Source: Trichoplax adhaerens (taxonomy: Eukaryota; Animalia; Placozoa). From it: a stretch of DNA of 64,000 nt. Shown one piece after another: positions 20,397 through 63,251 of this stretch. The first letter of the stretch is position 1. Each line of letters opens with the position of its first letter. Both the position numbers and the translations under genes were made by a program. The notes under the pieces are model-generated. The model worked only from the letters and a program-made list of their open reading frames with translations. It searched no databases and was not told where the DNA came from. The stretch is from the NCBI RefSeq assembly GCF_000150275.1, contig NW_002060946.1, positions 1,326,202 to 1,390,201 of the forward strand, given 5' to 3'.

Positions 20397-21245
20397 CTAG
20401 TTTAAATGTGGACCACCGACCCACCAGTTTGTTGTTGTACTATTTGCTATGCAAGAAAATCGTCAATTGATGGCATCATAATTATCAAAGACGTTTTCAC
20501 TCCCTGATATAGCGGGATACCTTAAATTACCTACAGTGCGCGTTAGCTGTTGGAAGTTTGATAGTCAGATGATAATAATCCTGATAACTGAAAAATGGAA
20601 TGCTGCATTTACTACACATATAATCCGCGGATATTAATGTAATCAACTACAGCATAAGTCCAAGGGGATCTGGGATGGAGAAAGTAATTGTAGGCATAAA
20701 ATGATACCCTTAAGTAATCACGATGATTATGTATTCCTTTTACGTCGTCGCTATTAAAATTACACGTAGCATGAAAATGTGTTGATGGACAAGCATTGAT
20801 CAACGTCGTCATTTTGGATCTGCTAAATCGATAATTTATCCAATTGGGCGCGCATTCATTAATCGGTGCATCATAATGAAAGCTCGTTTGAAAAGCATTT
20901 TTACGTGAATATCTTAACCACGACGATTTAATGTGAGTCTATGGAAATCTATGATCTGAATAAAATCACAAAATGCCAAATAGGGATTACTGGTAGAATC
21001 GTGTAGAGTAAAATATCTGTTTTGCGAAGTATGGTATGTTGTTCTGATAGCAGCGCAAGTCGTCGGCTTAAGTTGAATTGCCTAGTTTCAAAAATTTGCG
21101 TAGCTACAGTAGGATTTTAAACCGATTCGGAGCTATAAACGCACCATTCTCAACATAGACAGCCTATAACTTACCGCTAATCTTGCAATGGTAACATGCC
21201 TAATAATACCAGACAAGTACACAAAATGAGTTGAATCTTTTTCAT
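20397..21245 (-). pseudogene. Array copy 1: fibrinogen/intelectin-like secreted protein pseudogene
   Basis: Signal exon starts at ATG 21245 and is frameshifted. Exon 2 (acceptor 21082-21083) reads KPTTCAAIRTTY...PYLAFCDF, then a frameshift and Trp->TAG at 20939-20941. It retains THFHATCNF, DYLRVSF and NWWVGG. Confidence 0.85.
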
Positions 21246-23122
21246 TGCTGGACTACACTACTTTAAAGCCAAAGAATCACATGATTAACACGAAGCGGAA
21301 AGTTTAGTTATGTTAAAGCTCTCATGAGAAATTTTATTGCTCGTATTTATACAGTACTGTGCACATTGCACAGCGTACTGGTAACAAACGGCCTAACAAA
21401 ATTTTTCAATGAGCGCAATTAGCAGAGATAACTGCAAAAATTCGTTTCATCAGTGCCCAGTATTCCAGGCGCAAAGACATCGACAACGATAAGCCCTCAG
21501 CAGGTAATGAATGCGCATACTGTAGTAACTCTGCCAAGCCAGGTACCTCCTGTTCTTCTACAAATTTTCATGGCGTTCAGAGTTGAATACAAATATAGAG
21601 ATTTATCATCTCTTTCTTATTCTAAAAAAATTTATTAATTGCGAATTTAAACGTTACCCTCATTAGCTCTTAGAAACCAGGAGCAGGAATAACTGTTCAG
21701 TACATGAGGTAACGCGGCATTTCGAAGAATAGTGCACTGATAAGTCTTGAAAGCCAATAAACAGAAGTTAACAACATATGATAATCTTGATTATTAATTA
21801 CTAAGCTTAGTACCGTATCTTTTTATATGTTTGTAGTGTCACTGTGGAGTATTCGAGGAATGCAATAAACATGCTAAATTCGTCAATCAACGTTAAAAGT
21901 AAGTAAATTTCTAAATTTGCATAATCAAAAATGAAGCAATAGCAAATATTAATGATTAAATATAAATATTGTCATTCGGTGTATCGTTAATAAAATTAAA
22001 ACTTGATTTCTGAAATGGGGTTTATTTTTGTTTCTGGTTTAAAAAATCCATCCAAATAACTTGAAATGATTTTATATCAATACTGCATGTTTATATACTC
22101 TTACATGCATGTTCATCGATCAAGCATGTAAATACGAAAGTGCTGACTTAGGTCTCGGTTTAGATAGCTAAACTCATTTATCGTGAATACTAATCAGATA
22201 AGAAAATCGTCATCTCCTAACTGAAGATTATTTCTTACAGACTGATCAACAAGCAATCATCGAATGTTATGTAATGACCAGATTTAGTGTAATGCCTAAT
22301 TATCTCATCCACATTGTCCATTTCGTAATATTTACGAAAAGAAGATCGTAAAATGCTTCACATTAAGCGATAATCGAGATAGAATGTACAGAATATTCGG
22401 TAATTTTATTACCTCATCAAAAATGACAACGAGTAATATTCTAACAGTAAGGCTTTAGTTACGTTTGCAAAGGTGAAAATAAAGAACTTTAGAACTAATT
22501 TTGCTATAAACGTTCTTTAGTAATACACCTATACATAATACATAAGCCTCTATACATACGATCAAGTACTTGCACTGTTGTTGAAATAGAATTAATATAA
22601 TTTAAAATATGCTTAAAATAATTGCATTGACGAAGCCATTAGTTAGTTAGTTAGTTGATTATGATGCAGAAGGCACCAAATAATATTATAAACTAACTAG
22701 CTACATCGCCCGTCCTACGAGCGAATCATTGGCCCCCTTTAATATTTTAGCTTAATTCTATTAATCAATGCTTACATAAGTATTATTGCCAGGTATATTT
22801 AAATTGATAAAGTTGACAGAGTAAAATAAGATCACGCATTCTCATCTGGAAGCATTTGGCCTTCTAAAACTGACAACTGAAAGAAATAATACATGCGTTT
22901 GCCTTAAGGTAATGAAGTAAATAAACCGATTTCTTCTATGAGAGTGCGTTAAACTTATGCAACTATATTTATAAATAAAAAAGTCATAGTATGTATAAAT
23001 GATTTTAACTATAGATAATTTAATACTGGTATTATTGCATTTATGGCCACAATATCTATATCGTACTGGTTAATCAATAAAGTTGGTGATAGTAATCGTG
23101 AAAACTAAACAAGCAGTTCAAA

Positions 23123-23915
23123 TCAGTCATTGTAAGTACCACCTATCCACCAGTTTGTTGTCGATGTGCTAGTTGCAGTACATGGAAATTGCGAGTTGAC
23201 TCCATCATAAAAACAAAAAGCTCGTTCATTGGTTACTTGATTAGGAACATTAAAACGTCCTTAATTTGCTTTCTCTGTGGCAAGGTATGTATTTAAATGA
23301 TAGCTTCTGCTGCTATAGAATGGAATACTATATTTACTGCAGGAATAGCCACAAAAATTGATATAATCGATGGTATCGCAAGTCCATATACTTCTCAGGT
23401 CGAGGATGTAGTTGTAGGCGCAAAATGATATTTTTAGGTAATCGCGACGATTTGCCAATCCTTTTTCGGCTTCGCTATCAAAGTTACATGTAGCACGAAA
23501 ATGAGTTGATAGTAAAGAGTTTTTGAAAGCCGTCATTTTAACTTTGGAAAGTCTGTAATTCGGCCAGTTGGGTGTACATTCGTTAGAGGGAACATTGTAG
23601 TAAAAACTCCTACGAAACCTAGAACTTCGTGCATTAGTTTTCGATAACGATTCAATAAGAGTCCATGCAAATCCAGGATCTGATTGAAAATCACAAAATG
23701 CAAGATATTGCTTATTTGTAGAATCATATAGCGTAAAGTATCCATTCTGTAAGACGTGATAAAAGCTCCTGATATCTGTACATGTGTCAGTTTCGATTTA
23801 ATTACCTAAATTACGTAAATTATAAAGTAAAAGCCTTGTTATTATAATCTTATACGCTAAACTTTCGATAATATGGCCAGAGAAGGGATTAAATTGAAAC
23901 TAAAAGTTTCAATAC
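23123..23915 (-). pseudogene. Array copy 2: pseudogene
   Basis: Exon 2 (23123-23805) is homologous throughout (FCDFQSDPGFAWTLIES...TTNWWIGG). It has a frameshift near KPTTC and a premature TAA at 23261-23263 at the conserved Cys9 position. Exon 1 is degenerate, so the upper boundary is approximate. Confidence 0.8.
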
Positions 23916-25932: not shown

Positions 25933-26928
25933 TTAGTCATAAATGGCCCCACCTATCCACCAATTTGTCGTTGATGTGCTATTTGTTACACAAGAAAACT
26001 TTTCGCTGAAACTATAATAATTACCAAATATTCGCTCGTCAGCTACCGCATCAGGAACGTTAAACTTTCCACATTTCGTTTTAGAGTATGCAATATTTGA
26101 TTGTAGATGATTATTACTATCGCTATAGAACGGTATGCTACATTTACTGCATGAATATCCGCGAATATTGATATAATCTACTATAGCACAAGTCCAACCT
26201 CTGTTAGTGAGAAAGTAATTATACGCACAAAATGAAACCCTCAAATAATCACGATGACTTGTTAATCCAGTCTTGCTTTGGCTATCAAAGTTACATGTGG
26301 CACGAAAATGAGTAGATGATGTGGCCCCATGTAACGTTGCCAATTTAGCTTTAGAAAGTCTATAGTTTGACCAATTAGGAGTACATTCGTTAGATGGAAT
26401 ATTATATTGGAAGCTCTTTCGAAAGTTAGATGTTTGTGCATTGCCTCTCGATATCGATTCTATAAGAGTCCATGAAAATCCAGGATCTGATCGAAAATCG
26501 CAAAATGCAAGATATGGCTTATTTGTGGAGTCATAGATTGTGTAGTATCCGTTTTGATGGACCTGATATTTACTTCTGACATCAGCGCATGTCGCTGGTT
26601 TCGGTTTCATCACCTAGTAAACGACATGATAAAGTAGGATAGGATATATGAGTATAGTTATAGTGATAATTTCTATAATGCGGTGCAGTATAGCATGGGC
26701 AAAGTTAAAGTTACAGCCAATTGTCTGTCTTCCAGACACTAATTGGTTAACTGTTTAAATTCAAAAATAACTACTAAAAGTAAATGTAGACAACTTTAAC
26801 AATTGGTCAGCAGTTACCTGTTAGTCTGTACTATCTGATATCATAAAAATTAGTAAGCTTACCGCTAATCTTGCAAGAGGTAGCAACGATATTAGGATCA
26901 AGCAAACATATAAAGTGTTGTAGGCCAT
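25933..26928 (-). CDS. Array copy 3 (intact): secreted 10-Cys fibrinogen/intelectin-like protein, 248 aa
   Basis: Exon 1 (26863-26928) MAYNTLYVCLILISLLPLARLA, a signal peptide. Phase-0 GT-AG intron. Exon 2 (25933-26613) is open: C..NGYYTIYD..PYLAFCDF....GFSWTLIES resembles the start of a fibrinogen C-terminal domain. Confidence 0.9.
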
Positions 26929-26994
26929 ATTACTAAATGCTTTAGGAATAGCTTGGGTACTTGAAAAGTAAAAGAGGTTATAAGAGCATTATCC

Positions 26995-28720: not shown

Positions 28721-31616
28721 TAAAAATCTTAGTATGTAAGATGATGTATTTTTACATCAAGGTAATAAGGTTTGATTTTAGTAAAGCTGAAGTAAGATTC
28801 CTTATTGTTATAAGTTTGATAATTAAATTATGGGAATCGAAGCACTATAAAAATCAGTAATATGTAGGATTACGTGTAATAATAGAATATTAGCAATTTT
28901 AGCATTTCACTGCAAACGATATTCGAGCTACGTATATGCATTTATTTTACCTTCTAGGCAATGATAAGTTTGCTTTAGCCATTTCTGCAACTCAATATAT
29001 ATGTATACAGTATCTACTAGATAGTAGTTAAGCTTTTCCCAAGTGCATATCTTTGTATTTAGTATAACAACATTTAAAGGCCTAAGATCTTTTATTGATA
29101 TTTCAGTGTATGGTAATGCTAGCATCGTGCAACTGATGTAACTCTTTAGTAAGATATCCATATTTAATACAGATATATACGATACTAAGGGTATGATATG
29201 TATCAGTTGGGAAGTTTATTGAAAAAATTCAACCACTTTCCATAAGATTAAAAGAATGACTATAAAAGTACTAAATTATACCTTAGCGAAAATTTTCGAG
29301 AGAATTAGATTAGTAGAGATTGAAACCAGTGCTAAAGATAATTAATTTAAAAACTTCCCTTACTATATCTTGCATTGAAAATTAATTGAAATTGACAAAA
29401 TCATAAATTCTGGTGTAGAATATAATCATTATGATACTGTAATATATCTAAATAAACAAATTAATTAGCAGTAAAATTCATATGAATACAAGATTGGTTA
29501 CCAACAAAGGACTGAAAATTAATTAAATATTTCGATATATTGTGTGTGCAAGGCATCATAGGTAGATTCCTAAACAAAATATCCCAATGAAGACATTTAT
29601 TGATAGTAAAATAATGAGAGCTTATTTAAGTAAATAGTAAGAGATGTCATTTGGATAATTTATTATAGGCGAGTACCTATTCTGTAACTACGACCTGTAT
29701 GGAAACTAAGACAAAACTGTTAAATTATATCACAATTGAATCATTACAATTCATGTAATTTACTTTATTGAGGTGATTGATTTGCCAGATAAAGCCATAA
29801 ATGGGTCATTAGAAACGCAGAATGGGAATTAGGACCAATGCTTTAATACTGATTTCAGTGTTTGCTTACAGAGATTTTCTCGCATATTGCTGCAATGGCC
29901 GAGTAATAGTTTCCTGCTACTACTGTTGGTTTGCCTACGTAGCCCAAAATTTGAGTTAACAAAAATTAAGTAATTCCTTAATGTGACACACAAGGTCAAC
30001 ACCGAAAAATCGCCTTGAATAATAAAGTTTATTGATACATCCGTCTATCAGAGAAGATTTTCCCTCCTCATAAGAACAGTTGAAAGCGACTAGTGTCAAT
30101 CGAATAATTGTACTTTAACTCTTATATGGCAGACAGTTCACATAATCCTACATTTGGCTATCAGATATGGCCTTAACTGGAAAATCCCGTCTTATACTAG
30201 AAACAGTACAAGTGCGTAGTCTCATCCTTTTAGCTACCTACTGTACTTCTACAATTAGCTGAAACCATTACAGTTGCTCCACTTTGTTCAGCATAGAATT
30301 GGAATTGTCTTGTTCTTCAAGACTGAGACGATATTTCAAGTTAATTATAGTATCAATTTCTAAGCCACTAATGTTTGCAATTCGTCTATCATTATGGCAT
30401 GGGCAAGCCATTGGGACTCTAAAACACTTCTTTAGTTAAGTGCAAATAATTTTAACTATTGATCACATATGCAACAACATACGCGTATACATCGGTCACT
30501 ATGCTACATCGCTGCATACTGTTGCTAATACTACCAAATTATACATGTAAAGCTAAGAGTGAATTATTAGTGATATTGATGGAGCTAAATATTTGTCTTA
30601 CTAACAGACTGATGATCTTTTTTTCTTTAATTTTTCTATTCGTTAATATGGGAAATGGCTTTGAGTGCTACGGAATAGCATATGTAACGATTAATATAAC
30701 CAGCTCTGTTAATGGTCCATACTTCGTATCTTTTGTGTCCGTAAGCAAATACTTACTAAGCCATGCTTAAGTCTATATCTGCTCACTGCAGAAAGGTATT
30801 GCAATATTATTATAGAAATTTTAGCGATCGCAATAAGCAAAATCATGCAAATACTGTAGCAATTTAATACGAAATCTATCTGGATTATCGATAATTTTGT
30901 ACTGGTAAACTACCCCGTTCAAGCGAACAGGGATATAATTTGCAGAAAGCAATAAAGTAAAAGAAAAATTAACAGATAGACTGCCTTAGTTGGCTACGAT
31001 GCGCGATCGACGACGTCGAATAAACTATTGTATTTACTGTTTACATAACATAAAACCTATATATTTCATCGTTCATCTAATTTCACTTTATGATAACCTT
31101 TTATGGTCCTTTGAACAATATGTACTATAAAATGTAGTGTACTACGCAACATTCTTATCAACAACACTAACGCAACTTCACCATTTTACCCTGCAAATAA
31201 TAGACTACATATACCGTAAATGATGCTATATTTGCTCTGAAATACGCAAGATTAATGTTAATAGCGTGATTTATATCTAGATATTCAGAAAATTTTATTA
31301 CATCGGCGTTGCTGGTTTGTTATTTTATAAATTGTAAAATAATTATAAAATTGCTAGAATTATATATTTATATAATATAAAACTATGGAGAAAACTGCAT
31401 AAACCTTACTAATTTATAGAAAGATTCAATGTGAGCGACTTAATAATAATTCGACAATATGTGAAGGCTAACTTTAAAAAAGATGCTATTTCATGATTAT
31501 GACAATATATAAAATAAAATATTAGTTAGAATTGTTGTTAGAATTTAATGATCATATCGAAATAATTTGACACAATCGATAATTTGTGGAGTGGAAGCTA
31601 TGAAATCACTTTGTTA

Positions 31617-32457
31617 TTAATCATAGTAAGCTCCACCAATCCACCAGTTTGTTGTCGATGTAATGTTGCTAGTGCATGAAAAATGTGGATTGAATCTATA
31701 GTAAGAACCGAAGACACCTTCACTATCTACTGTATCAGGTACACTGAACCTTCCACAATTCTTCTTAGCGTATGACAGATCTACGAACAAATGATAGTTA
31801 CTAAAGCTATAGAATGGAATACTACACTTACTGCATGAATGTCCACGAATATTGATATAATCGACTATGGCACAAGTCCAAGTATTTCTACTAGCGAGAA
31901 GATGGTCATATGCACAAAAGGATACCCTTAAGTAATCTTGATGATTTACTAATCCTTTCTCTCCTTGGTTATCAAAGTTACACGTAACATGAAAATGCGT
32001 TGATAATGCAGAACCTTTTAAAGCCGTCATCTTAGCTTTAGAAAGCCGATATTTTGACCAATTAGGAGTACATTCATTAGCTGGAGCATTATAATGAAAA
32101 CTCTTACGAAAGGTAGATGTTGCTGCGTTGGTTCTCGACAATGATTCTATAAGAGTCCACGAAAACCCTGGATCCGATTCAAAATCACAAAACGCTAGAT
32201 ATGGTTTATTTGTAGAGTCATAAAGCGTAAAATATCCATTCTGAGAGACGCGATAGGTACTTTTAGCAGCAACACATGTTGTCGGTTTCGGTTTCATAAC
32301 CTAATAATAACATAAAAAGGGTAGTATAAGATTATAAAATTGATTTCCGTAATGCTACTTAATGAATATCGAAAAAATTGGCTTAATTTACAGAAGATCT
32401 TGTTTGAGCTAGCAACACGATTAGGATCGAGCAAATATACAAAGTGTAATTTATCAT
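31617..32457 (-). CDS. Array copy 4 (intact), 249 aa
   Basis: Exon 1 (32392-32457) MINYTLYICSILIVLLAQTRSS. Exon 2 (31617-32300) is open, has 10 Cys and ends TTNWWIGGAYYD*. Confidence 0.9.
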
Positions 32458-34058
32458 TTTTACTCAGTACTCCACGAACAATCTTGATATTTGAAGGTTA
32501 ATAACTAAAGCTAATCAGATCTACCCTTTTATATGTTGGTGTGGTTACCATGATATTTTCGAAGAATGTAATAAGCATTTGAATTCTGTCAATCAAATAT
32601 GTATATGATATACAATAATAAATATTTATCGAAAATTCTTCTGGCGTAAAGAGGTCAAAGGTACCATAGTTTGGACGATGACTCATCTTACATGTCAGCT
32701 GTTATGCTTTGTAAGCAATGAGTTCTACTCCGCGAGTAAGATTTGTTACTAACTTTATTATTAAAAATGCTGGGTTTTTATAGATATTCCAGCTTACACT
32801 TTTTGCCTTTTTGCGTCGTGGAATTTTACACATACATCTAATTACTAACTATTAGAGCTATCGTTCACTTTACAACATGCACATATATATAATAAATTAT
32901 CAGTCCGCCTTTTACAATATAGTCACGTACGATATTACAAGACTACACACAAAGTCATCGTATTATAAGTACTTATATAGATGGTATTCTAATTATATAC
33001 TTAACGCTCTATCTAATACCTAATGTAACATATATTGTAGTATCTAACACTATTTACAACATTAGCTTTGTCGCATTTGCTCGTGGTGCAGTACCACGAT
33101 AATAAAGCTTCATTTTAGGAAAAGTTTAATTTAAATTCTTAGTTATTTTTGTGATTGAATTGTAAGTAACACAAAGTTCAAGCAATACAATTTCAATTTT
33201 ATGTTTACAACGCTTACAGTATGCTTGTACAGATACTACTGTAGAATCAGGAAATGTATTTGCATAGTTACTTGAGTGAGAAGATCTTAGGTTTACTTTA
33301 AAATTGTATCTGTCATGAGATTGGCAAGCATAACTCTTGTAGAACAGTAATAATTACGTACAGCAGTTTGTATCTTTATTTACATATTTATTGAATTGGA
33401 ACTAATTTCATTTTCAGAGAATAAATAGGCTCGTATGTGCTATTCATCACATTACTTATAAACTGTGTCTTTCATTGCGATATCAGAAAATATACGTCGT
33501 TAAGCAGGAATGCGGAATACTCTCAATAATATAGTACGTTATAAAAATAGTCACCAATTGCCGATAATATTGAATAAATTACCTTAAAAGTTCAATATTT
33601 ATTTATGAATCATAAGTTATAAATAATTGTTTATTATTGCATATAAATATATCTGCTATTAATTATAAGGCTTAAGTTCTATGTAATACCAATATTTACA
33701 AAGTAGCAAATATTACATCGTTTTCGTTTTTAGTATTTGACGTAAAAAGAATAACATTAATGCTTACATGCTATAATTGTTTAATTCATTAGAACGAGTT
33801 GAATTTCCACGCCTATTTCAGCATCTGCACAACATGATCGTAGTTTGTGGGCTTTGTTATCTTATACTTCCAAGTAAACCGTCAATAAAGTCTAATTATA
33901 TTCGGAAAATAATGGGGTATGAAACTAGGGTGTAGAATCTAAATCTGCTTCGGCCATTCTAGCCATTTCTAGACATTCTAAAATAATAGCAAGCCTGAAA
34001 TTGCAATTACACATTAGAAACATTAAATATAACGTGGTCAATATCGATCTAATACTTT

Positions 34059-34997
34059 TGTAATGAAGGTTAATTTTTAGAATTTTCCTTCAAGTTCTTT
34101 TATTGTAAGTATTCTAGCTTAGTTTTGTATCGTGATAAGTATTCTAACTTTAAAAAAATATAACTTATTTGGTTGATTATAATGGTAGATTTTACTTAGT
34201 AGCTTAGTATCTTGTAAACCCGACTGCTTTATTCGGGTTAGAAGTTAACATTATCCGTACCTTAATTTTTGTTAAGAATCCGATATTACGATTTTTTAAT
34301 TCAAGCGATATATTTAGTTGATAGAATACATGTGTGCTAATTTTGATCATTAATTACAGTAGAAGTTGATGTTACTTTGTAATTTCATACAGTATGAACC
34401 CAAAACATTGATCTAGGATTGTTATTTTGACTTAGTGTATACTGTACAAATGTACAGTTTCAAGCTAAACTATACTTAGTATTAATTTAGTAGTTTTCGG
34501 GAATCTAGGGTATAATTTATCTTATCGTGTGTGTTTGATTGCTAGTTTAATTTGGAGTACTTTAGAATGATTTTGGATAGTCTAAAGCCATCAACTGCTC
34601 TGTGTAGCATATGAAAGGTGGTATACGTCGGTAATTGAGAGCAGTTGAAGTTAGAGAAGACGAGAAAAGTCTAGGATGATCGTAAGTTACTTCATTAATT
34701 GATAGTTTGGTTGGTTGAGGCAGTAGTTCTGCCCGTATTTTGTTATTCATAGAAGTTTTGCTAAGATTATCGTTAAAGTTATAATAAAGTGTTGTTTTCC
34801 CTTAATTTATTTTGTTTGGACTTCAATTATTGGTAGTTTAATTTAACATAGAAAATTTTATTTTATTTTTGAATCCGATACTGCCCTTTAATGAATTGCT
34901 ATACTACAGTAATTGCGTATATTATCAAATACAGATACCAAATAAGTCTTTACTTAAATAATCGAATATCTTTTGTAATCTGTATAAGGGTGTGACA
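34059..34997. mobile_element. Possible solo LTR (939 bp)
   Basis: Starts TGTAATG and ends GTGTGACA, the same end as family A. Flanked by CTTT on both sides (34055-34058, 34998-35001). Interior is T/G-skewed. A 4-bp AT-rich TSD is weak evidence. Confidence 0.45.
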
Positions 34998-36367: not shown

Positions 36368-37197
36368 TTAATCATAGAAGGCACCGCCGATCCACCAATT
36401 TGTTGTCGATGTGCTGTTCATAGTACAAGAAAATTTCGGGTGATAATGGACATAATTACCAAAGATATCTTCGCCAGATTTTACATCAGGAACGTTAAAC
36501 CTTCCACAACTTACTTTAGCTTGTGGAAGATCTACAAACAAATGATAATTGCTATAGCTGTAAAACGGAATATTGCATTTACTGCATGAATATCCACGTA
36601 TATTGATGTAATCGACTACGGCGCAAATCCAAGCATTTCTAGCACTAAAGAAGCTATTATACGCGCAAAAGGATACTCTTATGTAATCACGACGATTTGC
36701 TAATCCTTTCTCGTTTTGGTTATCAAAGTTACATGTCGCGCGAAAATGCGTGGATGAAGCAGCTTGTTTCAGTGCACTCATTTTAGCTTTAGAAAGTCTA
36801 TAATTCGACCAATTGGGTGTACATTCATTAGATGGAACATTATAATAAAAACTCTTACGAAAGGTAGTAGTTGCTGCATTGGTTCTTGATAGAGATTCTA
36901 TAAGAGTCCATGCAAATCCAGGATCTGATTGAAAGTCGCAAAATGCAAGATAGGGTTTGTTTGTAGAATCGTGGAGTGTGAAATATCCATTTTGGGAAAC
37001 GTGATAAATACTTCTAACAGCGGCACACGTTGTCGGCTTTGGATTAACTACCTAATCGATAATGTGAAGAATTCTTATAGTGCTAACTTCAGCTACGATG
37101 CTATAATGAAATATTCATCTAAATAGCTCACCGCTGATCTTGCAATCGGTAGTATGGCTATTACCATAAAATAGAAAAATAAAGTATATCGAAGCAT
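36368..37197 (-). CDS. Array copy 5 (intact), 249 aa
   Basis: Exon 1 (37132-37197) MLRYTLFFYFMVIAILPIARSA. Exon 2 (36368-37051) is open for 90 codons upstream of the ORF-track Met (VVNPKPTTCAAVRSIYHVSQNGYF...). Confidence 0.9.
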
Positions 37198-40131: not shown

Positions 40132-40968
40132 CTAGTCATAAAAGGCACAGCCGATCTACCATTTTGTAGTCGTGGTGCTATTCGCCACACAAGAGAATTT
40201 CGAGTCGGTATAATAGGATTGACCAAAACTTGTTCATTTGATATTGCATCAGGAAAATTAAATTTTCCACAGCGCATTTTGGCGATTGAAAGATTCACAA
40301 TTGTACGGACACTACCATATCCAATAAATGGAATACTACATTTACTGCTAGAATATCCTCGAATATTGATATAGTCAACCTCAAGATAATCCCAATCACT
40401 TCTAGAAGTAAGGAAATGCCTACATGCACAAAATTGTACCTTAATATAATCTTGACGATTTGCTAATCCTTTCCCCTTTGGCTATCAAAGTTACACGTTG
40501 TACGGAAATGAGTCGATGATGAAGCACTTTTCAATGTAGTCATTCTAGCTTTAGAAAGTCGATAATTTGATCAATTGGGCATACGTTCATCGGACGGGAC
40601 ATTATAGTAAAAGCTCTAACGAAGTGAAGAGCTTTTTGCGTGGTTAGTCGACAGCGATCCTATAAGAGTCTACGCAAATCTGGGATCTGATCGAAAATCA
40701 CAAAAAGCGATATGGTTTACTTGTAGAATCATAAAGTGTATAATATCTATTTTGAGGGGCGCGAATTATAGTCCTAATAGCGGTACATGTTATCGGTTTC
40801 GCTTTAATTACCTTACAAACTAATAATATAAAGAATTGTTACAATATCGGATTTATACTACGAGCTCTATTTTAAAATCCGAGCTAAACTACTCACCGCC
40901 AATTTCAATGCAGGTATTATAGCTATCAAGATCAGATAAATAAGTTTATACAAAGTCCACTGAGCCAT
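40132..40968 (-). pseudogene. Array copy 6: pseudogene
   Basis: Exon 1 (40897-40968) is intact: MAQWTLYKLIYLILIAIIPALKLA. Exon 2 (to 40811) has frameshifts and stops at conserved Trp codons (40670-40672, 40571-40573, 40156-40158). Confidence 0.85.
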
Positions 40969-42077: not shown

Positions 42078-43649
42078 TCAGTATCGACCTCCAATCCGCC
42101 AATTCGTAGTTGCTGCATCCTTTATAGCACAGCCGAATAAAGCATCGTAAAAATCATAGCTTTCGAAAACAGCTTCGGTATTTGCCTTCTGTACTATAGT
42201 TTGCACTTGGTCGCATTTTACTTTCAGCTGAGCAGGATTTATTAATGAATAAAAATTAAGAGCGCCAATATATAATGGAATGCTAGAGTGGCTACATGAT
42301 TTTCCTCGAAGATTTAAACACCTGACTTTAGCGCAATGCGATTCTTCACTTAGTATCTTTCTATTCTAATCATGGATTTGAGTATAGCAAATGAGCATAG
42401 CAAGTTTCAAATTATGTGATATACGCGTATATACTTTATCGTTTTAATTAAAAGTTTCTATATCAATAAATTTTTAAGCCAAGAAATTAAAAGAGTTAAA
42501 GACTTGTGTCTGACAGGTCTATCAAATGGTAATACTATCTGTTAAATGAGCACATTATCGTAAATCGTCAGCAAAGCGACGGGAGTTTGCACTAGTAACT
42601 TACAGTAAGAACTACGGTAGTTATTATTTTGTTACAGTAAATTATGCTGTACTGTAGTAAGAGTTCTTATACGGTAACTAATGTTAATTGATTATAGTGT
42701 TATGTCTTGTAACGCTTGTGATGAATATTCTGAAGATATTCAACTATAGATGATACTATGAATAATTCTGCATATGACCATACTGTAATCTAATTATCTA
42801 GAATCGTTCAGTACATGTCTAAGATTATGAATAATTTCTGTATTAATTTAGCTATACAATATGAACTAAATTTTCATGAACTGTTGTGACTAATGATAGC
42901 AGCTACCGAAGGATATTTAAGCTCGGTAGATAGCTGAATAAAAGAGAGTCCTATAGCTGTTTAAGGTAGAAGTAAAGGCGTCTTAATTCTTGTGAGATAG
43001 TTCAGGAATACTGAATCCCGGAGACTACAGTAATTTAGAGATTTGTCTTACCTTATCTTTGTCACGAAGCTGGCTTGTGACAACTTGATAAAAGTAATGA
43101 ATTAGATTGTATCTCAATTAATATATTTACGTATTATGGTCATCATTTTAAAACAGTAGATATTTTAGTAATATATTTATCGTAGCATTGTTAAGTAGAT
43201 AAAAGGTTATTAAAATGTAGTCGAAATTACAATATGAGCACTATTAAGTTCCAGAAGTCTATAAACTGATTCAATTTAGTGCTTATATTGTCGGCTAAAG
43301 ATCATAATAAATGTCCTTCCTAATGAACCGTTTTAATGGATTGCTTAGTATCCAAGTAAATCTGGACTCTGATTAAAATCATAAAGAATAAGATAGGATA
43401 AAGCTATCGAATTATGGGTGATTGATGTATGTCCTATAATACAATACACACTAAGTCTGAGCCTAAAATAGATAGATGGTGCTGTTCTAGGTTAGACTTC
43501 CTAGTTCGTCATATAAAAAATGTTATTTTAACGGCATTAATTTGTGTGCTTGTATGCTATAGGGGAACAACTTAATGATGCTCTTTCAACCTTGCCATTC
43601 GTTATATAGAAATTGAAACCAAAAATAGGTGCAAATTTCACTTATACAT
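42078..43649 (-). pseudogene. Array copy 7: highly degenerate, split pseudogene
   Basis: C-terminal remnant at ~42078-42370 (...TTNWRIGGRY*). N-terminal-like remnant at ~43250-43500 (YDF..SP..W). Stop-containing signal-exon remnant ending at ATG 43649. About 0.8 kb of unrelated DNA lies between the parts. Confidence 0.5.
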
Positions 43650-46450: not shown

Positions 46451-49304
46451 TTGTGTCTTGTAGAGATTGATGCAGTTGTTCAGGTATATAGCAGTTTGCC
46501 ACATTAACAAAGTCACTACTAATTTTTTAAAGTACTTATACGGGTATGGCATGATATGCTATCTTTAAAATGTAAAGTTGGAAGGCTTACTGTGTCACCA
46601 TACAGTTGTTATATACTCTAAACAGCAACTAACACATATCTGGAACCAACTCATACGGCGTAATACTAAGCTATAGCTGTGATATTTAGATTGTAAAGCG
46701 AACGAAACAGTAGGCAATAGAAAATCGTAGCACTATAATAAAAATTATCATCTTGACATAATGTACGGCACTCAAATAAGCTAACGAACTCTACTTACGG
46801 TAGAGAGTATCGAAACAGCACGTCACTGATAAACACTACAGTACTCGTATATTATTAAAATTAAGTAAGCTGCTATAGAAAATTTTAATGATTAAATATG
46901 ACGATATTACTGTTATGATGCTAAGTACATACCTGATTTCTTCATAGTATTTAAGCTACGTAGTACTAAAATAAGTAAGTAAGTAAACTCCTCTTGATGA
47001 TAATGGAGTACTGTAACAGTCACTAAAACCGGACATCATGCTATATGAATTGAGCCAGCTATTAGTAGTATGCCTCTAGTAGTATAGCTTTATTATTGTA
47101 TATTTAAATGAGCACTATTTATTATTCAGTACTGTAATACTTACTCTTAGCCATACTGTCCACCATAATGTAATTAAGTAAGTACTGTATAACACTTATA
47201 GAGAGTTTCCGCAAGCACAGTTTACAGTATATCTTTGGCTATTTCTAAATCTGCAAAGAACCTTACATTTGTCACTGCAAATCTTTATTGGTACCATTAT
47301 ACCCGTATATCCAAACACTTTACAAAATCAACTTCAAAATGCCATATTAAAATTATTTGATAAGCTACAACTTGTGGGATCTATGCGTAGCACATTACTA
47401 TGGTAGCTAGCACGATAGCTAGCAAATGGGATAAACTATTGTGGCACAGTTCACTGCTTGTATAAATGCGCTCTCTTTCATTATACCATTGCATGCACAG
47501 CCACCACACAGTATATATCTTGAAGATGCTTTAATATTATGTAGGATAGAGGTTTATAACATACTAATTTCTAGCTAAACTCTAATAATTATATTATAAT
47601 TGATATCCCGTGTACGGATATCGCTGAATGGAGCTGAGTTAGGTTGTAGTGTTATTTTCCCTTAGTTGATTAACATAACGAACTGATTGTATCTACGATT
47701 AGTAAGTAACATAAATAATAAATTGGATCACTTACATTACATTAAAGCGGCATACGGAGATTTACTGTAATATTTGTACTGCACAGTGTACTATTCTTAA
47801 AATATTACCATCAGCTATGAAAATTAAGTCGTAGACTAGTTAAGGTTCAATTTTGTGATTGCACTAATATCAAACTAAGCGGTAAAATATTTATGCTGCG
47901 CAAGTCTAGTCATTGCAGTTAACATAGACTGATATTTTACTGTATTCGATTAGTTATAATATCTAGCGAAAATGCTATATACATGATCGGAAACGCAATA
48001 AGTCTAACTATTTGCGGTCCATATGATACGTAGTTGCAGTATTTACATTTCTTCCCTGTCATCTAAATTTATGCTTATATTAGAAAATAAACGTTTTAGA
48101 ATAAAAAATTTATTCTTCGGATAACTTTAATCATTAATTATAGTAAAAATGCCATTAAATATTTTAATTGGTCGTACTCTGAATTAAAATATTCATAGAA
48201 TTGCAAAAATAAAAATACAAGCAGTTTCACAACGTAGTGGTTCACTGATATCCATATTGAAATTAAAGTTTGTCATTACTGATATATATGAACCAAAATA
48301 GTTGAATTAGCCAGAAGCAAATACTCCTTTAGATATAGTCGTATCAAAATAGATACCTATTTTCCTTAAGATTCCTGGTACTTATTTTTTGGTGATTTAC
48401 AGGTTTGCATTTAGGGTAAAAGATCTTACCATACACATTAAAATTACTTTCACCTTTTTGGTGCAGTCAAGTTTAATTTAGATTTAAATTTTCTTTTTTC
48501 ATGCTTCATATCATTGGATATCTAGTAATTATCCTGTGATGCTAATTACCTACTGATAAAAATTACTGTCATGGCTATAACTTACATAGCAGTTAAAGTA
48601 CCTCTGATTATAGTAAATACAGGTATTTTTGCAGAATCTAAAGTTCAAATATTTAAAAATATTTTTAATTTCACTTAAATCGGTAATTAATTTCTATCCG
48701 ATACTTTGGGTTCAGATAGCGATCAGAAAAGTGAAACCACTCTACCAGTCTAAAGTCTTTTATAATTTTAATAAATTGTTACACATGAGCCTTATAAACA
48801 GCTCCTCTTCCCACGAAGCGAATTTAACAGCCACAATGTCGCTGCTGCTGTGCTATTAGTTTGGAGCTGAATAGCGTAAAGATATTTTTGTAATAAGAGT
48901 ATGAGTGCAAGATGACAAGATGACGAGAATTAAACCATAACAACTATAAATTTATAAAAGATTTATTAAGTTAATGTAGCATTAGCAAGTTTTAATTATG
49001 TAGGAGAAAAGAACGATTTACGAGCAACTTTCTCAGATTTCAAGAGATAATTCGAGGCACTACCTAAGGCCCAAAATTAAAAAAATTGGCAATGCTGAAT
49101 TGGTTATTCATTAAAGAATTTTCTAGCCATTAATTTGAACCGAGAACATTTTTAAACTTTGACACAGTATTTTAGTATCAAAAATATAAACTGTTGTCTT
49201 ACGCAAGGTTAACTAAGAATACATAATTGGAAACTATTCAATTAAAAGGCGTTATGAAATTTGAAGCATTTATGAAAACTTAATTTATAAGCGATCAGAC
49301 AGAA

Positions 49305-49889
49305 AGTCCAAGCATTTTTAGATGCAAGGAGATGATTGTATGAGCAAAATGATACCCTTAAGTAATCGTAATGATTTTGTAACCCCTTCTAACTGTTACT
49401 ATTAAAGTTACACGCTGCACGAAACGAGTCGACGATGGAGCATTTTTTAGAGTCATCATTTTAGGTTTGGAAAGTCGATAACCCGTCCAATTGGGTGAGC
49501 ACTCACCAGGTGGAACATTATTATAGAAATTCCTACGAAAAGTTGTGCGGCGCGCGTTATCGGTTGATAGCGATTCGATTAGAGTTCACGCAAATCCAAG
49601 ATCTGAGCGAAAGTCGCAAAATGCCAGATGAGCTTTAGTTGTAGAATCGTAGAGTGTATAATATCCATTCTTTGCCGCAGGATACTCGCTTCTAATTGCA
49701 ATGCATGTTATTGGTTTCGACTATATTTCCTAAAAGAAAGTATCGTATATAATTGTAACAGAAGACGATCTTACTTTCGGGAGAAGTGACCATGTAGCAG
49801 CTAGTTATGATTCATGTATTTACCTTTAAACTTGTTAGTGACAGTATTACCAACACTATCAGTTAGCTTGAGACCATGTATTTAATCAT
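49305..49889 (-). pseudogene. Array copy 8: 3'-truncated pseudogene
   Basis: Exon 1 (49824-49889) contains TAA. Exon 2 from 49729 has TAG at codon 3 and Trp->TGA at 49586-49588. Homology stops after DYLRVSFCSYNHLLASKNAWT. Confidence 0.85.
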
Positions 49890-54156: not shown

Positions 54157-55003
54157 TCAATCGAAGTAACCTCCACCAATCCACCAATTTGTTGTTGACG
54201 TACTATTTGCAGTACAAGAGAATTTTATATTGACGTTGTGATAAAATCCGAAGGCATCTTCATTTGTAATCATTTCAGGGACAGTAAATCTTGCACATGA
54301 AGATTTGGATGTTGGGAGATGTATAAATAAATGATAGGCATTCGAGCTATAAAATGGAATACTACATTTAGTACATGAATGGCCCCGAACATTAATATAA
54401 TCTACGATAGCGCAAGTCCAGACATTTCTGGTACTCAGAAGGTAATTATATGCACATAGTGAAACTCTTAGGTAATCGTCACGATTCTGTAATCCTTTCT
54501 GGCTTTGGCCGTTGAAGTTACACGTAGCGCGAAAATGAGTTGACGATGCAGAGCTCTTTATTGCTGTCATTTTGGATTTTGAAAGGCGATAGCCTGTCCA
54601 ATTAGGTGTACATTCATTTGACGGAACATTAAAACTAAAACTTTTACGAAATTTCGAACTACGTGCGCTTGTTGTTGAAAGTGATTCAATTAGTGTCCAT
54701 GCAAATCCAGGATCCGATTGAAAATCACAAAAGGCTATATAGGGTTTATTTGTTGAATCATAGAGTGTAAAATATCCATTCTCCGTGATACGATATTTGC
54801 TTCTTATGGCGACGCATGTTGTCGGCTTCGATGAAATTTCCTAAAAGTATAGATAAGGATTGTAATCATAATGCTTTGATTTAAGTAAAATTACATCATA
54901 AATAATTAATATAATATAATCAAATATACTCAAATACCTCTAGTTTTGCCAGTGGCAGCATCATTAATAACATTAGGTAAATGGAGACGATTTTTTTAGT
55001 CAT
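54157..55003 (-). CDS. Array copy 9 (intact), 249 aa
   Basis: Exon 1 (54938-55003) MTKKIVSIYLMLLMMLPLAKLE. Exon 2 (54157-54840) is open (EISSKPTTCVAIRSKYRITENGYF...TTNWWIGGGYFD*). Confidence 0.9.
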
Positions 55004-59745: not shown

Positions 59746-60470
59746 ATGTTGAAGATACTACTTTTTCTTGTTCTTGCAGCTATATTACCTTTGGTAGAGC
59801 TAGTTGTAAGTTAGATATTTCTCGTTTCAATCTCATATTATATCAAGCTCGCGAAAATGTTATTATACTCTATATGATCTGGATTGAAAATCCGTTTAGT
59901 AGCTATTCAGATTTTGAATCTGAGCCACCTTTCGTTTGGACGTTAATAGAATCGCTATCATTTAAGAATTATAAGGATGTAACGTATCATAGAGGATTTC
60001 CTGTGGATGCCCCATTTAGTGAATGCAATTCATCGTGGGCCTTATTTCGCTTAAGTGCTGCTAAAATGAGTTCTATTATAGCTGCATATGGATCAGTACA
60101 TTTTCCCGCAATATGCAATTTTAATCCAAATATAGGAACAAGATTAAAAAATCGTCGTGATTATTCAAGATAATCAGCTTGTAAGAAGCGTAATACTCTT
60201 GGCAATCAGTGGAATCAGTACATTGAAGTAGGCTATATCAAGAAAAGTTCATGCGTAAGGTGCAAGATACCATTCTATAGCTCTTCAGATGCTCATGTCC
60301 ATCTGTATGTCACTGTAGTACCAAACCATTGCGTCACTTTCAAAGTTAATGGCATTACCCATCATGAAGACGTTTTCGGTCATTACGGAGCTCGTCCGTC
60401 TGGCTTCTCTTGCCTAGCCAATTACAATTCAACTACTAATTGGTAGATTGATGGCATTTACGTTGAATGA
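59746..60470 (+). pseudogene. Array copy 10: pseudogene (plus-strand subfamily)
   Basis: Exon 1 (59746-59805) MLKILLFLVLAAILPLVELV followed by GTAAGT. The start of exon 2 is deleted or frameshifted. DFESEPPFVWTLIES is retained. Premature TAA at 60171-60173 and NW*IDG (TAG 60444-60446). Confidence 0.85.
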
Positions 60471-62374
60471 ATTTTGGTCGGCTTGAGTTATTTTTCTGCA
60501 TGATGCGAAATCTTAATCATTTTAAGACGCTTATATTTAAGCAATTTGACTGTCTCAAAGAACTTCTAGTTCTGATCCATTTAAATTATTGTAATTTAAG
60601 ATACAGTGCAAATATGTCATAATTGATTGTAAATTCGATATTTACAGTTTATTACGGTAATAAATCTGTCTTCACTGCTATCACTTACAGTACATGTATG
60701 ATATATGAAATTATGGAGAATTTATCCTACATTTTTACGGCTAGTGGAAAGAACTAAAACGTTAGATGTGGCGCTTGAATTTACATTGATATATTGGCCA
60801 TTTCCATGATAATGTATAAATTTATGATCATATCAATTTGTATCATAAAAATATTTGTACCATACCGTAGCATAATAGACATTTTCTTAGTATCCAACTA
60901 GTGCATTTCCTCGCTCGTGATATTTCGTGTAACTAGTTTACTGATCACCATACTTCAGTCTATGTTATGCAGTCTATGCTGCAATAATTGCATAGCGAAA
61001 TGCAATCGCGGCAGATCGAATGATCCCCGATTTGGTTTTATTAACAAATCTAAATCAGAAAATTTAGGAAGCTGTAGCAGAACAGAAATCTTTGGATTGT
61101 TACTTTATAATCTTCACATCTGCTTAAGTAATCGATGTGTGAGAAGAAAAAGATGATATTATGTGATAGGTAGCTATTATTGGCAAGATTACTTTAATTA
61201 GCTTATTTGGTAGCTATCACGGTAATACCTGGATCAATGAAACGGACTGCTCAAATGATTTTGTTGCATATTTTGGATATATTGGTAATAGAGCATGACG
61301 GCGATGCAATGATACTGCTACATTAATATAAATATGAATGTAAAACAACGTTGAAACCAATATCGTAGCGGGTATAAATGGATCCATAGAGATTGACTCT
61401 TTCTGTAAACAGTTTATGACTTCAGATTATATGATGTTTTAGTTAACTTCTCTGCGAATTCAGTATGTATTGTATTCTAAATGCCGACATTAGTCGATAT
61501 GATTAACTAAGATATTTTTTATAAAATAGCTGCATATGCAACATGGTTATATGTAAAATTAACTGTAGCTAGAGTAATTGCCCGTTCTAACATTTCTCTT
61601 TCTTATTAAATAATAACTCTAATTTGACCGCGATCAGTTAACCCTAAGAAGATCAAATAGTGTATTATTTCATTCATGTGTGTGGCAGTCAAGCTCATGA
61701 TGGAGAGTTAAATATTAAAAAAAACTGTACCTCTAAGAAATAAGAAAGCGAGAGCATTAGGATTATTTAATCCATTACGTATTGCTATAAAATTGGTTTC
61801 CCTTACACCTAGAAAGTGATCTAATGATATAACAATATTAAATCATAATTTTATAATAGAAATAATTTTCTCCTTTCAATCATTACAACTCGAAAAGTGG
61901 TTGGACTATTATTTATGAATCAATACAGCTACAAGTTTTCTAACGTAAAAAATGACCGGCATTGATCAATTATGACCTTTGTCTTCGTTTATTTCACTTT
62001 GTACTAGTACAGTAGGGAATCCTGTTAAGCTTATGTGAGTGAGGCTCAAAATATTCCATTCTCAATCAAATTTATTGTTGCAGAATATTAGCAGGCGCTA
62101 AATTGAGGCTGGTTCGAGATCGAAATCAAAATAATAATTATTTCTTTTCGGCTTGATACCATTCAATAGAATGTTTAAGATTTACGTAAAGAATTTAGCA
62201 CCAGATATAGACTACAATATTACAGGATATAAATAGCTACGTCAGTACAGTTTTTCCATCATTTTCTTTCGGGTACAAGATCCAGTAAATCACACTTCTC
62301 AATAATACGGGTATATTTCCTAGAAATAACTTCTTGCTCGCTATCGTCTTGTTACTCATTGTTTAACTTACAAA

Positions 62375-63251
62375 ATGTCCAAATTCATTGCACTTGTTCT
62401 CGTCATTGCGACTTTTCTACCCAATGGAATGTCATCGGTATAGCTAATTATTTAACTTATCTTTTTTAACCATTACGCTATCGATAGAACTATACTAAAA
62501 ATTCCATTGCTACTTCGATATATAATCAATACGAAATGATATTGTTGTCTCATAATAGGTTATCAAACATCACCCCAAATCGTGTTATGAAGTCAAAGAG
62601 TATCTTCAAGCGACTGAAAATGGATATTACAACTTATTCGATAGCTTAAGCAGTCCTTATACGACATATTGTGATTTCGAATCAGAACCACCGTTCGTAT
62701 GGACATTAATAGAGTCATTTTCTTTAGAAGAAGGTCAAAAAACAATTAATCGAAAAGGCTTTGTTGAAAATCATCCAGTTGGAGAATGTCATCTGTCATG
62801 GGCAGCATTTCGACTATCCAAAATCAGAATGGATACGGTTTTTGGCTCGTATGGATCAACACATTATCGTGCAACGTGTAATTTTAATGTTGTTAATGGA
62901 ACAGGATTAGTAAATCGTGTCGATTACATGCGTGGAGAGTTTTGTCATAATACGTATATATTTAAGTCTTATGGTGCATATCTATGCCGTGTCGTTGATT
63001 ATGTGAATATACGTGGACACGTCTGTCGCAAGTGTACATTGCCATTTTATGCTACAACAACCTACCATAATCATATCGATCTTACCTATTCGGCTTCTCA
63101 CTGTAGCAAATTCGCTGTTCCAGATGCGATTACGAATGAAGATGTTTTCGGCCAATATTCTAATTCTAATCCCTTATTTTCGTGTGTAGCTAATAAAAAC
63201 TCTACGACCAATTGGTGGATCGGTGGAGCTTATGTTGCAGAAGCATTTTAG
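62375..63251 (+). CDS. Array copy 11 (intact, divergent plus-strand subfamily), 251 aa
   Basis: Exon 1 (62375-62437) MSKFIALVLVIATFLPNGMSS. Exon 2 (62559-63251) is open (VIKHHPKSCYEVKEYLQATENGYYNLFD...YCDFESEPPFVWTLIES...TTNWWIGGAYVAEAF*) with the same 10 Cys. TATAAATA at ~62228. Confidence 0.9.

What the first reader, a model, noticed from the sequence alone, without database searches (positions are those of the whole stretch)
20397..63251. 43-kb birth-and-death array of at least 11 secreted 10-Cys fibrinogen/intelectin-like genes: candidate undescribed innate-immune or lectin effector family
Seen: 11 homologous two-exon genes (20-24-codon signal-peptide exon where recognisable, phase-0 intron, ~227-aa mature exon), 5 intact and 6 dead. 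Known: the N-terminal C-x(10)-NGYY/F-x(10)-FCDF-x(6)-WTLI pattern matches the first subdomain of fibrinogen-related domains as in intelectins and ficolins, and placozoans are reported to have expanded intelectin-like genes. The C-terminal two-thirds (THFRATCNF, DYINIRG-x-x-CxxC, E-x-x-FG-x-Y, FSC-x(5)-STTNWWIGG) does not resemble the canonical fibrinogen or intelectin C-terminus as I know them. There is no collagen or coiled-coil stalk. Inference: a stand-alone secreted recognition/effector domain with rapid gene turnover, typical of host-microbe or feeding-related families.
Basis: partly seen in the sequence, partly recalled or inferred. Interest (0 to 1): 0.85.

Follow-up and report, generated by a model that had tools for sequence, protein, structure and literature searches.

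The report
Known placozoan intelectin-like gene array
The 43-kb array of 11 two-exon genes (5 intact, 6 dead) for small secreted fibrinogen/intelectin-fold proteins in Trichoplax adhaerens is real, but it is the "placozoan intelectin" cluster already published in 2019, and its sugar-binding role is still untested.

Summary
Observation confirmed. The window (Trichoplax adhaerens, G000:C1411) holds 11 homologous copies between 20397 and 63251. Five are intact (c3, c4, c5, c9, c11) and six are dead.

The family is not undescribed. Kamm et al. 2019 (PMC6321704) list the orthologous Trichoplax sp. H2 models TrispH2_001764-001773 as "putative intelectins". They already report the ~250 aa size, the signal peptide, 10 conserved Cys, the short N-terminal FReD, the conserved non-vertebrate C-terminus, the missing collagen stalk and the nine-gene cluster. 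Mayorova et al. 2025 (PMC12013895) map family members to secretory cell types.

- The intelectin sugar-binding loops appear to be absent.
- Full-length homologues occur in cnidarians, a sponge and some bacteria, so the domain is not placozoan-specific.
- The paralogues are old (dS > 1) and under purifying selection (dN/dS 0.10-0.28), so turnover is not rapid.
- RNA contigs cover c4 and c5 and confirm the c5 splice.

The scan also noted the continuation of this array in an adjoining window (s1-774266).

The parts
20397..21078 (-). copy 1, pseudogene (mature-domain exon broken by several frameshifts and stops; no convincing signal exon)
23126..23797 (-). copy 2, pseudogene: one in-frame TAA (23263-23261) at a conserved Cys position, plus loss of other conserved Cys/Gly residues
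25933..26613 (-). copy 3, intact mature-domain exon (100% identical to TrispH2_001764)
26863..26928 (-). copy 3 signal-peptide exon (22 codons, GT donor, phase 0)
   Evidence: matches the N-terminus of P0004
31617..32300 (-). copy 4, intact mature-domain exon (98% identical to TrispH2_001765); covered by RNA-seq contigs
32392..32457 (-). copy 4 candidate signal-peptide exon (22 codons, homologous to those of c3 and c5; missing from the H2 gene model; splice not confirmed by RNA)
36368..37051 (-). copy 5, intact mature-domain exon (TRIADDRAFT_63826); covered by RNA-seq contigs
37132..37197 (-). copy 5 signal-peptide exon; the 80-nt intron 37052-37131 is spliced out in RNA contigs
40135..40808 (-). 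copy 6, pseudogene (at least 3 frameshifts); its signal exon remnant lies at 40897-40968
42081..42335 (-). copy 7, C-terminal fragment only (~85 codons), pseudogene
49260..49720 (-). copy 8, truncated and frameshifted N-terminal two-thirds, pseudogene
54157..54840 (-). copy 9, intact mature-domain exon (TRIADDRAFT_55268)
54938..55003 (-). copy 9 signal-peptide exon (22 codons)
   Evidence: matches P0003
59746..60470 (+). copy 10, pseudogene: signal exon 59746-59805, then a shortened junction, stops at 60171 and 60444, invariant Cys lost; annotated in H2 as the truncated model TrispH2_001769
62375..62437 (+). copy 11 signal-peptide exon (21 codons)
   Evidence: matches P0021
62559..63251 (+). 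copy 11, intact mature-domain exon (ortholog of TrispH2_001770)

Best explanation
This is the largest genomic cluster of the published 'placozoan intelectin' family. It comprises 16 tandem copies in T. adhaerens, 11 of them in this window. Each live gene has a short signal-peptide exon and one exon for a compact ~226-residue, disulfide-rich globular domain. The whole domain adopts the fibrinogen-related (FReD) fold and is closest to the X-type lectin intelectin.

Shown here: the gene structure, secretion signals, fold, family membership, transcription of c4 and c5, the age of the paralogues and purifying selection.

Inferred: the proteins are released from epithelial secretory cells and bind extracellular ligands, most likely glycans on microbes, prey or mucus. 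Binding would use the loop-rich C-terminal (P-subdomain-like) region that carries the family-wide E-D-x-F-G-x-Y and S-T-T-x-W-W motifs. Paralogue diversity would provide a repertoire of specificities. The binding site is probably not the intelectin one, because the intelectin Ca2+/diol-binding hairpin and aromatic-box loop appear to be deleted.
Against: No binding data exist for any member. Pfam, and hence any standard annotation, sees nothing in the window's proteins. In Kamm's alignment the intelectin ligand residues (N260, E262, H263 on the C259-C265 hairpin; W288, Y297) have no conserved counterparts: the hairpin is a gap, and the placozoan proteins end 18 residues after the Cys that aligns near C280. 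Several FReDs (angiopoietins, FGL1, tenascin) bind proteins, not sugars, so the fold does not fix the ligand class. A homotrimer prediction gave no answer. I could not find which cell types express the genes of this particular array.
Confidence: 0.75

Rival explanations
1. The proteins are secreted FReD-fold ligands that bind protein partners, such as receptors or matrix components, as angiopoietins, FGL1, tenascin FReDs or MFAP4 do. They would act in cell signalling or adhesion rather than as lectins.
Against: Large tandem expansions with many pseudogenes, expression in mucus- and granule-secreting epithelial cells and co-occurrence with carbohydrate-binding modules in other taxa fit recognition lectins better. 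No receptor candidate is known.
Confidence: 0.15
2. They are structural components of the secreted coat (glycocalyx, mucus or granule matrix) with no specific recognition role.
For: They are small, Cys-rich and abundant in secretory granule cells according to PMC12013895. The distantly related COLFI domain, which matches at the N-terminus, is an assembly module.
Confidence: 0.07
3. The array is mostly decaying DNA: the 'intact' copies are unexpressed relics, and the observation has no functional meaning.
For: Six of the 11 copies are dead.
Against: The five open copies keep all 10 Cys and show dN/dS of 0.10-0.28 despite dS > 1. c4 and c5 exon bodies are covered in three RNA-seq runs while the intergenic DNA is not, and c5 is spliced.
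Confidence: 0.02

Closest known systems
Placozoan 'putative intelectins' (Kamm et al. 2019, BMC Genomics 20:5; TrispH2_001764-001773; PANTHER PTHR16146)
   Same: These are the same genes. c3, c4, c5, c9, c10 and c11 are the T. adhaerens orthologues (98-100% identity) of six of the nine models in the largest published cluster. The ~250 aa size, signal peptide, 10 Cys, short detectable FReD and lack of a stalk are all already described.
   Different: The paper did not report the unannotated pseudogenes (c1, c2, c6, c7, c8), the full-domain fold, the family's presence outside Placozoa, or the age of and selection on the paralogues. It calls the family a placozoan-specific expansion.
Vertebrate intelectins / X-type lectins (human ITLN1 4WMQ, Xenopus XEEL 5ZC0, lamprey LSVL 7E1E)
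   Different: The placozoan domain is about 60 residues shorter (226 against ~285). Identity is only 13%. The C259-C265 hairpin carrying N260, E262 and H263, and the W288-Y297 loop, have no counterpart in the published alignment. There are no N-terminal inter-chain Cys. No Galf or KDO binding has been shown.
Canonical FReDs (ficolins, tachylectin-5A, angiopoietins, fibrinogen beta/gamma; Pfam PF00147)
   Different: The window's proteins give no Pfam PF00147 match at all. The B and P subdomain sequence motifs are unique to this family (STHWRATCNF, VDYINIRGxxCxxC, EDxFGxY, STTxWW). No collagen, coiled-coil or IgSF partner domains are present.
Uncharacterised cnidarian, sponge and bacterial proteins with the same domain (e.g. 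Stylophora LOC111330812, Nematostella LOC116611467, Rhopilema LOC135681285, Oscarella transcripts, Deltaproteobacteria MAG TNF36352.1, Ca. Komeilibacteria MFW0837853.1)
   Same: They show full-length homology (domain E 1e-44 to 1e-78), including the 8-Cys core and all C-terminal motifs.
   Different: They are mostly fused to EGF, PAN, discoidin or LamG modules, or repeated 2-4 times in giant proteins. They lack the placozoan-specific Cys76/Cys128 pair.

Membership tests
Fibrinogen-related domain (FReD) superfamily | N-terminal A subdomain: Cys ... (Y/F)CD(M/F) ... WT(L/V) motif with its disulfide | tested here: met
   The profile of 95 family members hits PDB intelectins at E 1.5e-9 to 3e-7, and fibrinogen, angiopoietin, ficolin and tenascin chains at 1e-6 to 1e-2, always over profile positions ~20-75. 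Eighteen of 95 members hit Pfam Fibrinogen_C at the N-terminus. C8 and C37 are 91-99% conserved.
Fibrinogen-related domain (FReD) superfamily | Whole-domain FReD fold (A, B and P subdomains) | tested here: met
Fibrinogen-related domain (FReD) superfamily | Match to Pfam PF00147 above the gathering score | tested here: not met
   None of the five intact window proteins gives a Pfam family at E <= 1, apart from a chance Piezo_cap hit.
Fibrinogen-related domain (FReD) superfamily | Ca2+ site and ligand pocket in the P subdomain (D-x-D-type loop before the NCA...GGWW segment) | tested here: inconclusive
   The family has a conserved E-D-x-F-G-x-Y ... C ... S-T-T-x-W-W segment with similar spacing. 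No residue-level superposition was possible, because model coordinates are not exposed.
Intelectin / X-type lectin | Closest structural relative is an intelectin carbohydrate-recognition domain | tested here: met
Intelectin / X-type lectin | Ligand-binding Ca2+ residues (hITLN1 N260, E262, E274, with H263) and the aromatic box W288/Y297 | tested here: not met
   In the published alignment (Kamm Dataset S4) the C259-C265 hairpin falls in a gap or in non-conserved positions. The placozoan proteins end ~18 residues after the Cys aligned near C280, whereas ITLN1 has 33 residues there, including W288 and Y297. This depends on the alignment and needs a structural superposition. The residue numbers are from my own knowledge of Wesener et al. 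2015 and are consistent with the sequence shown.
Intelectin / X-type lectin | ~285-residue domain with intelectin-specific insertions; disulfide-linked trimer through N-terminal Cys | tested here: not met
   The mature protein is 226-228 aa and starts 7 residues before the first FReD Cys. About 90 ITLN1 residues are unaligned. The trimer prediction gave no answer.
Intelectin / X-type lectin | Binding of exocyclic 1,2-diol glycans (Galf, KDO and others) | not testable with these tools
   This needs recombinant protein and glycan arrays.
Ficolin / collectin-type opsonins | Collagen-like or coiled-coil oligomerising stalk N-terminal to the head | tested here: not met
   Exon 1 encodes only a 21-24-residue signal peptide, and exon 2 starts directly with the globular domain.
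Published placozoan intelectin family (Kamm 2019) | Orthology or identity to the listed TrispH2 models, with signal peptide, ~250 aa and 10 conserved Cys | tested here: met
   c3 is 100% identical to TrispH2_001764 and c4 98% to TrispH2_001765. The rows for 001766, 001768, 001769 and 001770 in Dataset S4 read as c5, c9, c10 and c11. All are listed in Dataset S3C.

The most novel reading that the evidence does not exclude
The 'placozoan intelectins' would not be true intelectins. They would be one branch of an unnamed, ancient, compact FReD-fold domain family with an 8-Cys core and the motifs STHWRATCNF, VDYINIRGxxCxxC, EDxFGxY and STTxWW. The family is shared by non-bilaterian animals (Placozoa, Cnidaria, Porifera) and by bacteria (a Deltaproteobacteria/Myxococcota-type MAG, Ca. 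Komeilibacteria). It would use a ligand site different from both ficolins and intelectins. It would either predate animals or have crossed between bacteria and early animals by horizontal transfer.
Probability: 0.35. Interest if true: 0.5.

Novelty: already known. Interest (0 to 1): 0.27.

Why it matters
As posed, the finding rediscovers a published family, so it opens no new question by itself.

First, the 'short FReD' of placozoan intelectins is an artefact of sequence divergence. The whole protein is one intelectin-like FReD fold but probably lacks the intelectin sugar site, so calling these proteins intelectins and assuming Galf/KDO-type specificity may be misleading.

Second, the same full-length domain is abundant in corals, anemones, jellyfish and a sponge, and is present in bacterial giant surface proteins. 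This contradicts the 'placozoan-specific' view. It also defines a domain family with no Pfam model, present in animals whose host-microbe and symbiosis biology is actively studied.

Third, the pseudogene census and the dS and dN/dS values show an old, selectively maintained repertoire rather than a fast arms-race array.

Tried and rejected
1. A first AlphaFold run on an 11-sequence alignment failed (pLDDT 40.7). Only the 95-sequence alignment gave a usable model.
2. Pfam on the five intact proteins gave nothing. A single-sequence PDB search gave only a marginal intelectin hit (E 0.007).
3. A homotrimer prediction (complex prediction, three copies) returned 'no answer' with score 0.00. It is evidence neither for nor against oligomerisation.
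With P0020 it found nothing in GTDB genomes. With P0029 it recovered its own MAG contig (L001, GC 73%, domain present) and four paralogues in a second MAG. Those four (L002-L005) gave no hit of the a2.hmm domain model among their ORFs of 100 aa or more, so they were not used as support.
6. The supplements and main text of PMC12013895 do not mention TRIADDRAFT_63826, 55268 or 55274, so no cell type could be assigned to this array's genes.
7. The domain tree of 157 domains groups the bacterial domains together. Deep supports are weak and there is no root, so I draw no direction of transfer.
8. The 10 kb upstream of the window (L008) is withheld and reads N. It was not pursued.
9. All searches and folds used the mature-domain exon alone, by reference. 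The join was made only inside a script to check frame and length.
Full report
WHAT IS THERE

The window is Trichoplax adhaerens, G000:C1411:1326202-1390201. A tblastn of the open 226-codon exon at 31620-32297(-) against the window finds 11 homologous loci between 20400 and 63233, and none elsewhere in the window.

Six-frame reading shows five uninterrupted copies:
- c3, 25936-26613(-)
- c4, 31620-32300(-)
- c5, 36371-37051(-)
- c9, 54160-54840(-)
- c11, 62559-63251(+)

Six copies are dead:
- c1: several frameshifts and stops.
- c2: a single TAA at 23263-23261 replaces a conserved Cys, and other conserved residues are lost.
- c6: at least three frameshifts.
- c7: an 85-codon C-terminal fragment.
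- c8: a truncated, frameshifted N-terminal part.
- c10: stops at 60171 and 60444, the invariant Cys of the CDF motif is lost, and the exon junction is shortened.

A scan for ATG-initiated hydrophobic mini-exons ending at a GT donor in phase 0 finds one 80-250 nt upstream of c3, c4, c5, c6, c9 and c11, and one directly upstream of c10. They resemble each other (M-x-x-Y-T-L ... L-P-x-A-R-x-A). The frames, checked only in a script, are open and give 249-251 aa with 10 Cys in the mature part.

INDEPENDENT SUPPORT FOR THE GENE MODELS

c5, c9 and c11 are 100% identical to existing T. adhaerens protein models (TRIADDRAFT_63826, TRIADDRAFT_55268, P0021). c3 is 100% and c4 98% identical to Trichoplax sp. 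H2 models TrispH2_001764 and TrispH2_001765.

Three RNA-seq runs of one study, from a ~98% identical strain, were laid on 31500-37300 (5801 letters, within the operators' limit). Their contigs cover the c4 and c5 exon bodies and leave most of the rest uncovered. They show no depth over 32470-34021 or 34992-35379, although a likely DNA run covers everything. One RNA contig skips 37052-37131 (80 nt, GT..AG on the minus strand), which is the predicted c5 intron. A second run has a loose end that reads into the c5 signal exon. The c4 splice was not seen. Its signal exon (32457-32392) is missing from the H2 model and remains a prediction.

THE ARRAY IS LARGER THAN REPORTED

Fetching the next 20 kb shows five more copies at window coordinates 65075-79358:
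- c12: a fragment.
- c13: TAA at codon 6.
- c14: intact.
- c15: intact, identical to TRIADDRAFT_55274.
- c16: broken.

That makes 16 copies over about 59 kb. A nucleotide tree splits them into two subfamilies: c1-c9, c15 and c16, against c10-c14. Dead copies occur inside both. Genome-wide, the exon matches 69 places on many scaffolds, including a second cluster of ten or more copies on C1403.

IT IS ALREADY DESCRIBED

Kamm et al. 2019 (PMC6321704) report 31 'putative intelectins' in Trichoplax sp. H2. Their description covers:
- proteins of about 250 aa with a signal peptide;
- a FReD detectable only over the first ~70 residues;
- a C-terminal part conserved among placozoan sequences but not alignable to vertebrate intelectins;
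- 10 conserved cysteines;
- no collagen or coiled-coil;
- five clusters of 2-9 genes;
- PANTHER PTHR16146 assignment and HHpred support.

Their Dataset S3C lists TrispH2_001764, 65, 66, 68, 69, 70, 71, 72 and 73. In their Dataset S4 the rows for 001764, 65, 66, 68, 69 and 70 read as c3, c4, c5, c9, the truncated pseudogene c10, and c11.

Mayorova et al. 2025 (PMC12013895) show by FISH and single-cell data that ten family members mark dorsal epithelial secretory cells. Others mark mucocytes or a gland/peptidergic type. I could not find the genes of this array named there.

UniRef already calls the T. adhaerens proteins 'Fibrinogen C-terminal domain-containing protein'.

WHAT THE DOMAIN IS

Sequence methods see only the N-terminus. 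Pfam gives nothing for the window's proteins. A 95-member profile matches PDB intelectins (E 1.5e-9 to 3e-7) and fibrinogens, angiopoietins, ficolins and tenascins (1e-6 to 1e-2), always over profile positions ~20-75.

With that alignment AlphaFold2 gives a confident single-domain model (pLDDT 96.5, pTM 0.93). The earlier 11-sequence run had failed.

An unbiased scan of 48,161 PDB representatives gives intelectin-1 11.2, ANGPTL3 9.3, H-ficolin 8.8, FGL1 7.8, fibrinogen chains 7.2-7.8 and procollagen C-propeptide 4.1. Everything else scores 3.5 or below.

It is nevertheless predicted to complete the same fold, and intelectin is the nearest solved relative by about 2 Z units.

IS IT AN INTELECTIN?

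Probably not in the strict sense.
- The domain is about 60 residues shorter than the intelectin domain.
- Identity is 13%.
- In the published alignment the ITLN1 Cys259-Cys265 hairpin carrying N260, E262 and H263 falls in a gap or in non-conserved positions.
- The placozoan proteins end ~18 residues after the Cys aligned near ITLN1 C280. ITLN1 has 33 residues there, including W288 and Y297. The residue roles are from my own knowledge of Wesener et al. 2015. The numbering agrees with the sequence printed.
- There are no N-terminal inter-chain cysteines.

I could not superpose coordinates, so this is an alignment-dependent inference. The family instead conserves its own motifs. Across 157 domains from all taxa, the residues C8, C37, W47-T-L, S52, R84, T105-C106, D121, C142, G152, C155, C158, C181, F196-G197, Y199, C208, T216 and W219 are 78-99% conserved. 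C76 and C128 are confined to placozoan sequences and probably form an extra disulfide.

DISTRIBUTION

A profile search of 1.84 billion cluster representatives finds 1037 proteins at E <= 1e-3, with 635 at <= 1e-10 and 175 at <= 1e-30. Named members include:
- corals: Oculina patagonica, Stylophora pistillata, Porites evermanni;
- the anemone Nematostella vectensis;
- the jellyfish Rhopilema esculentum;
- the sponge Oscarella pearsei;
- a foraminiferan transcriptome (Nonionella stella), where contamination is not excluded;
- bacteria: a Deltaproteobacteria MAG (TNF36352.1) and two Ca. Komeilibacteria proteins on 200-kb and 860-kb contigs.

The deltaproteobacterial contig has 73% GC and encodes two complete domains at E 1e-51 to 1e-57. 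Another MAG protein (P0020) has four complete domains. The bacterial domains keep the 8-Cys core and all C-terminal motifs.

Partner domains are extracellular and often carbohydrate-binding: EGF and PAN in corals, EGF_CA plus discoidin in the jellyfish, and Laminin_G_3, sialidase-N lectin and DUF2341 in Komeilibacteria.

In a 157-domain tree the bacterial domains group together, but deep nodes are weak and there is no root. I claim no direction of transfer. All named members are 'hypothetical' or 'uncharacterized'.

EVOLUTIONARY TEMPO

Among the intact copies, pairwise dS is 1.1 or more and often saturated. dN/dS is 0.10-0.28. Nucleotide repeats are confined to the coding exon at 62-78% identity. 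The c10 pseudogene is shared with Trichoplax sp. H2. 'Birth-and-death' fits as a description of the live/dead mix, but the array is old and under purifying selection. No whole-gene signal of diversifying selection was found. Site-level tests were not done.

MECHANISM

Shown here: two-exon secreted precursors, a compact disulfide-rich FReD/intelectin-like fold, transcription of c4 and c5, and selective maintenance.

From the literature: family members are made by epithelial secretory cell types.

Inferred (about 0.55): extracellular glycan recognition of microbes, prey or mucus through the loop-rich C-terminal subdomain, with paralogues providing different specificities.

Rivals are protein-ligand signalling or adhesion as in angiopoietin, FGL1 and tenascin FReDs (0.15), and a structural coat component (0.07). 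A homotrimer prediction returned no answer and is not used.

PROCEDURAL NOTES

- The 10 kb upstream of the window is withheld as N.
- All searches and folds used single exons by reference.

VERDICT

Novelty: already known. The residual interest lies in three points: the full-fold assignment, the likely absence of the intelectin sugar site, and the unremarked spread of this Pfam-less domain across non-bilaterian animals and bacteria.

Noticed in passing
window 64001 onward (L006 and L007; window coordinates 65075-79358): The array continues beyond the window with five more copies: c12 fragment 65075-65224(+), c13 67137-67811(+) with TAA at codon 6, c14 70876-71547(+) intact, c15 74828-75499(-) intact and identical to TRIADDRAFT_55274, c16 78739-79358(+) broken. 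The total is 16 copies over about 59 kb.
   Followed up: yes
window 34060-34880: An ~820-bp dispersed repeat lies between c4 and c5. It has at least 48 copies in the genome at 74-90% identity and no long ORF, like a non-autonomous transposon. Its depth in a likely DNA run is about tenfold, and it is present in RNA-seq contigs.
   Followed up: partly
window 35416-35839: A short stretch between c4 and c5 is covered by RNA-seq contigs in two runs but belongs to no recognised gene. It may be an unannotated transcript or repeat fragment.
   Followed up: no
window 32392-32457 (-): c4 has a plausible 22-codon signal-peptide exon, homologous to those of c3 and c5. The Trichoplax sp. H2 model TrispH2_001765 lacks it (226 aa, listed without a signal peptide). 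The splice is not confirmed by the RNA contigs examined.
   Followed up: partly
L001:132-4709 (Deltaproteobacteria MAG SBGO01000145.1); P0124 and P0140 (Ca. Komeilibacteria); P0020: Bacterial giant proteins carry 1-4 complete copies of the 'placozoan intelectin' domain, with the same 8-Cys core and C-terminal motifs. L001 has 73% GC, and the Komeilibacteria proteins lie on 200-860-kb contigs next to LamG, sialidase-N and DUF2341 modules. This points to an ancient domain or to inter-domain transfer. No direction could be inferred.
   Followed up: partly
G000:C1403:1516197-1549658 and C1403:1795091-1795726: A second tandem cluster of ten or more family copies lies on another scaffold. One family domain is embedded in a 1219-codon open frame, a mosaic protein. 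TRIADDRAFT_64387 (EGF-rich, 930 aa) also ends in this domain.
   Followed up: no
mature-protein positions 76 and 128 (e.g. within window 31620-32297): Two of the ten cysteines (in N-E-C-T-P-N-W and S-F-C-A-Y) are conserved only in placozoan members (82%) and absent from cnidarian, sponge and bacterial homologues. This suggests a lineage-specific extra disulfide.
   Followed up: partly
G000:C1411:1316202-1326201 (L008): The 10 kb immediately upstream of the window is withheld by the operators and reads N. It was not examined.
   Followed up: no
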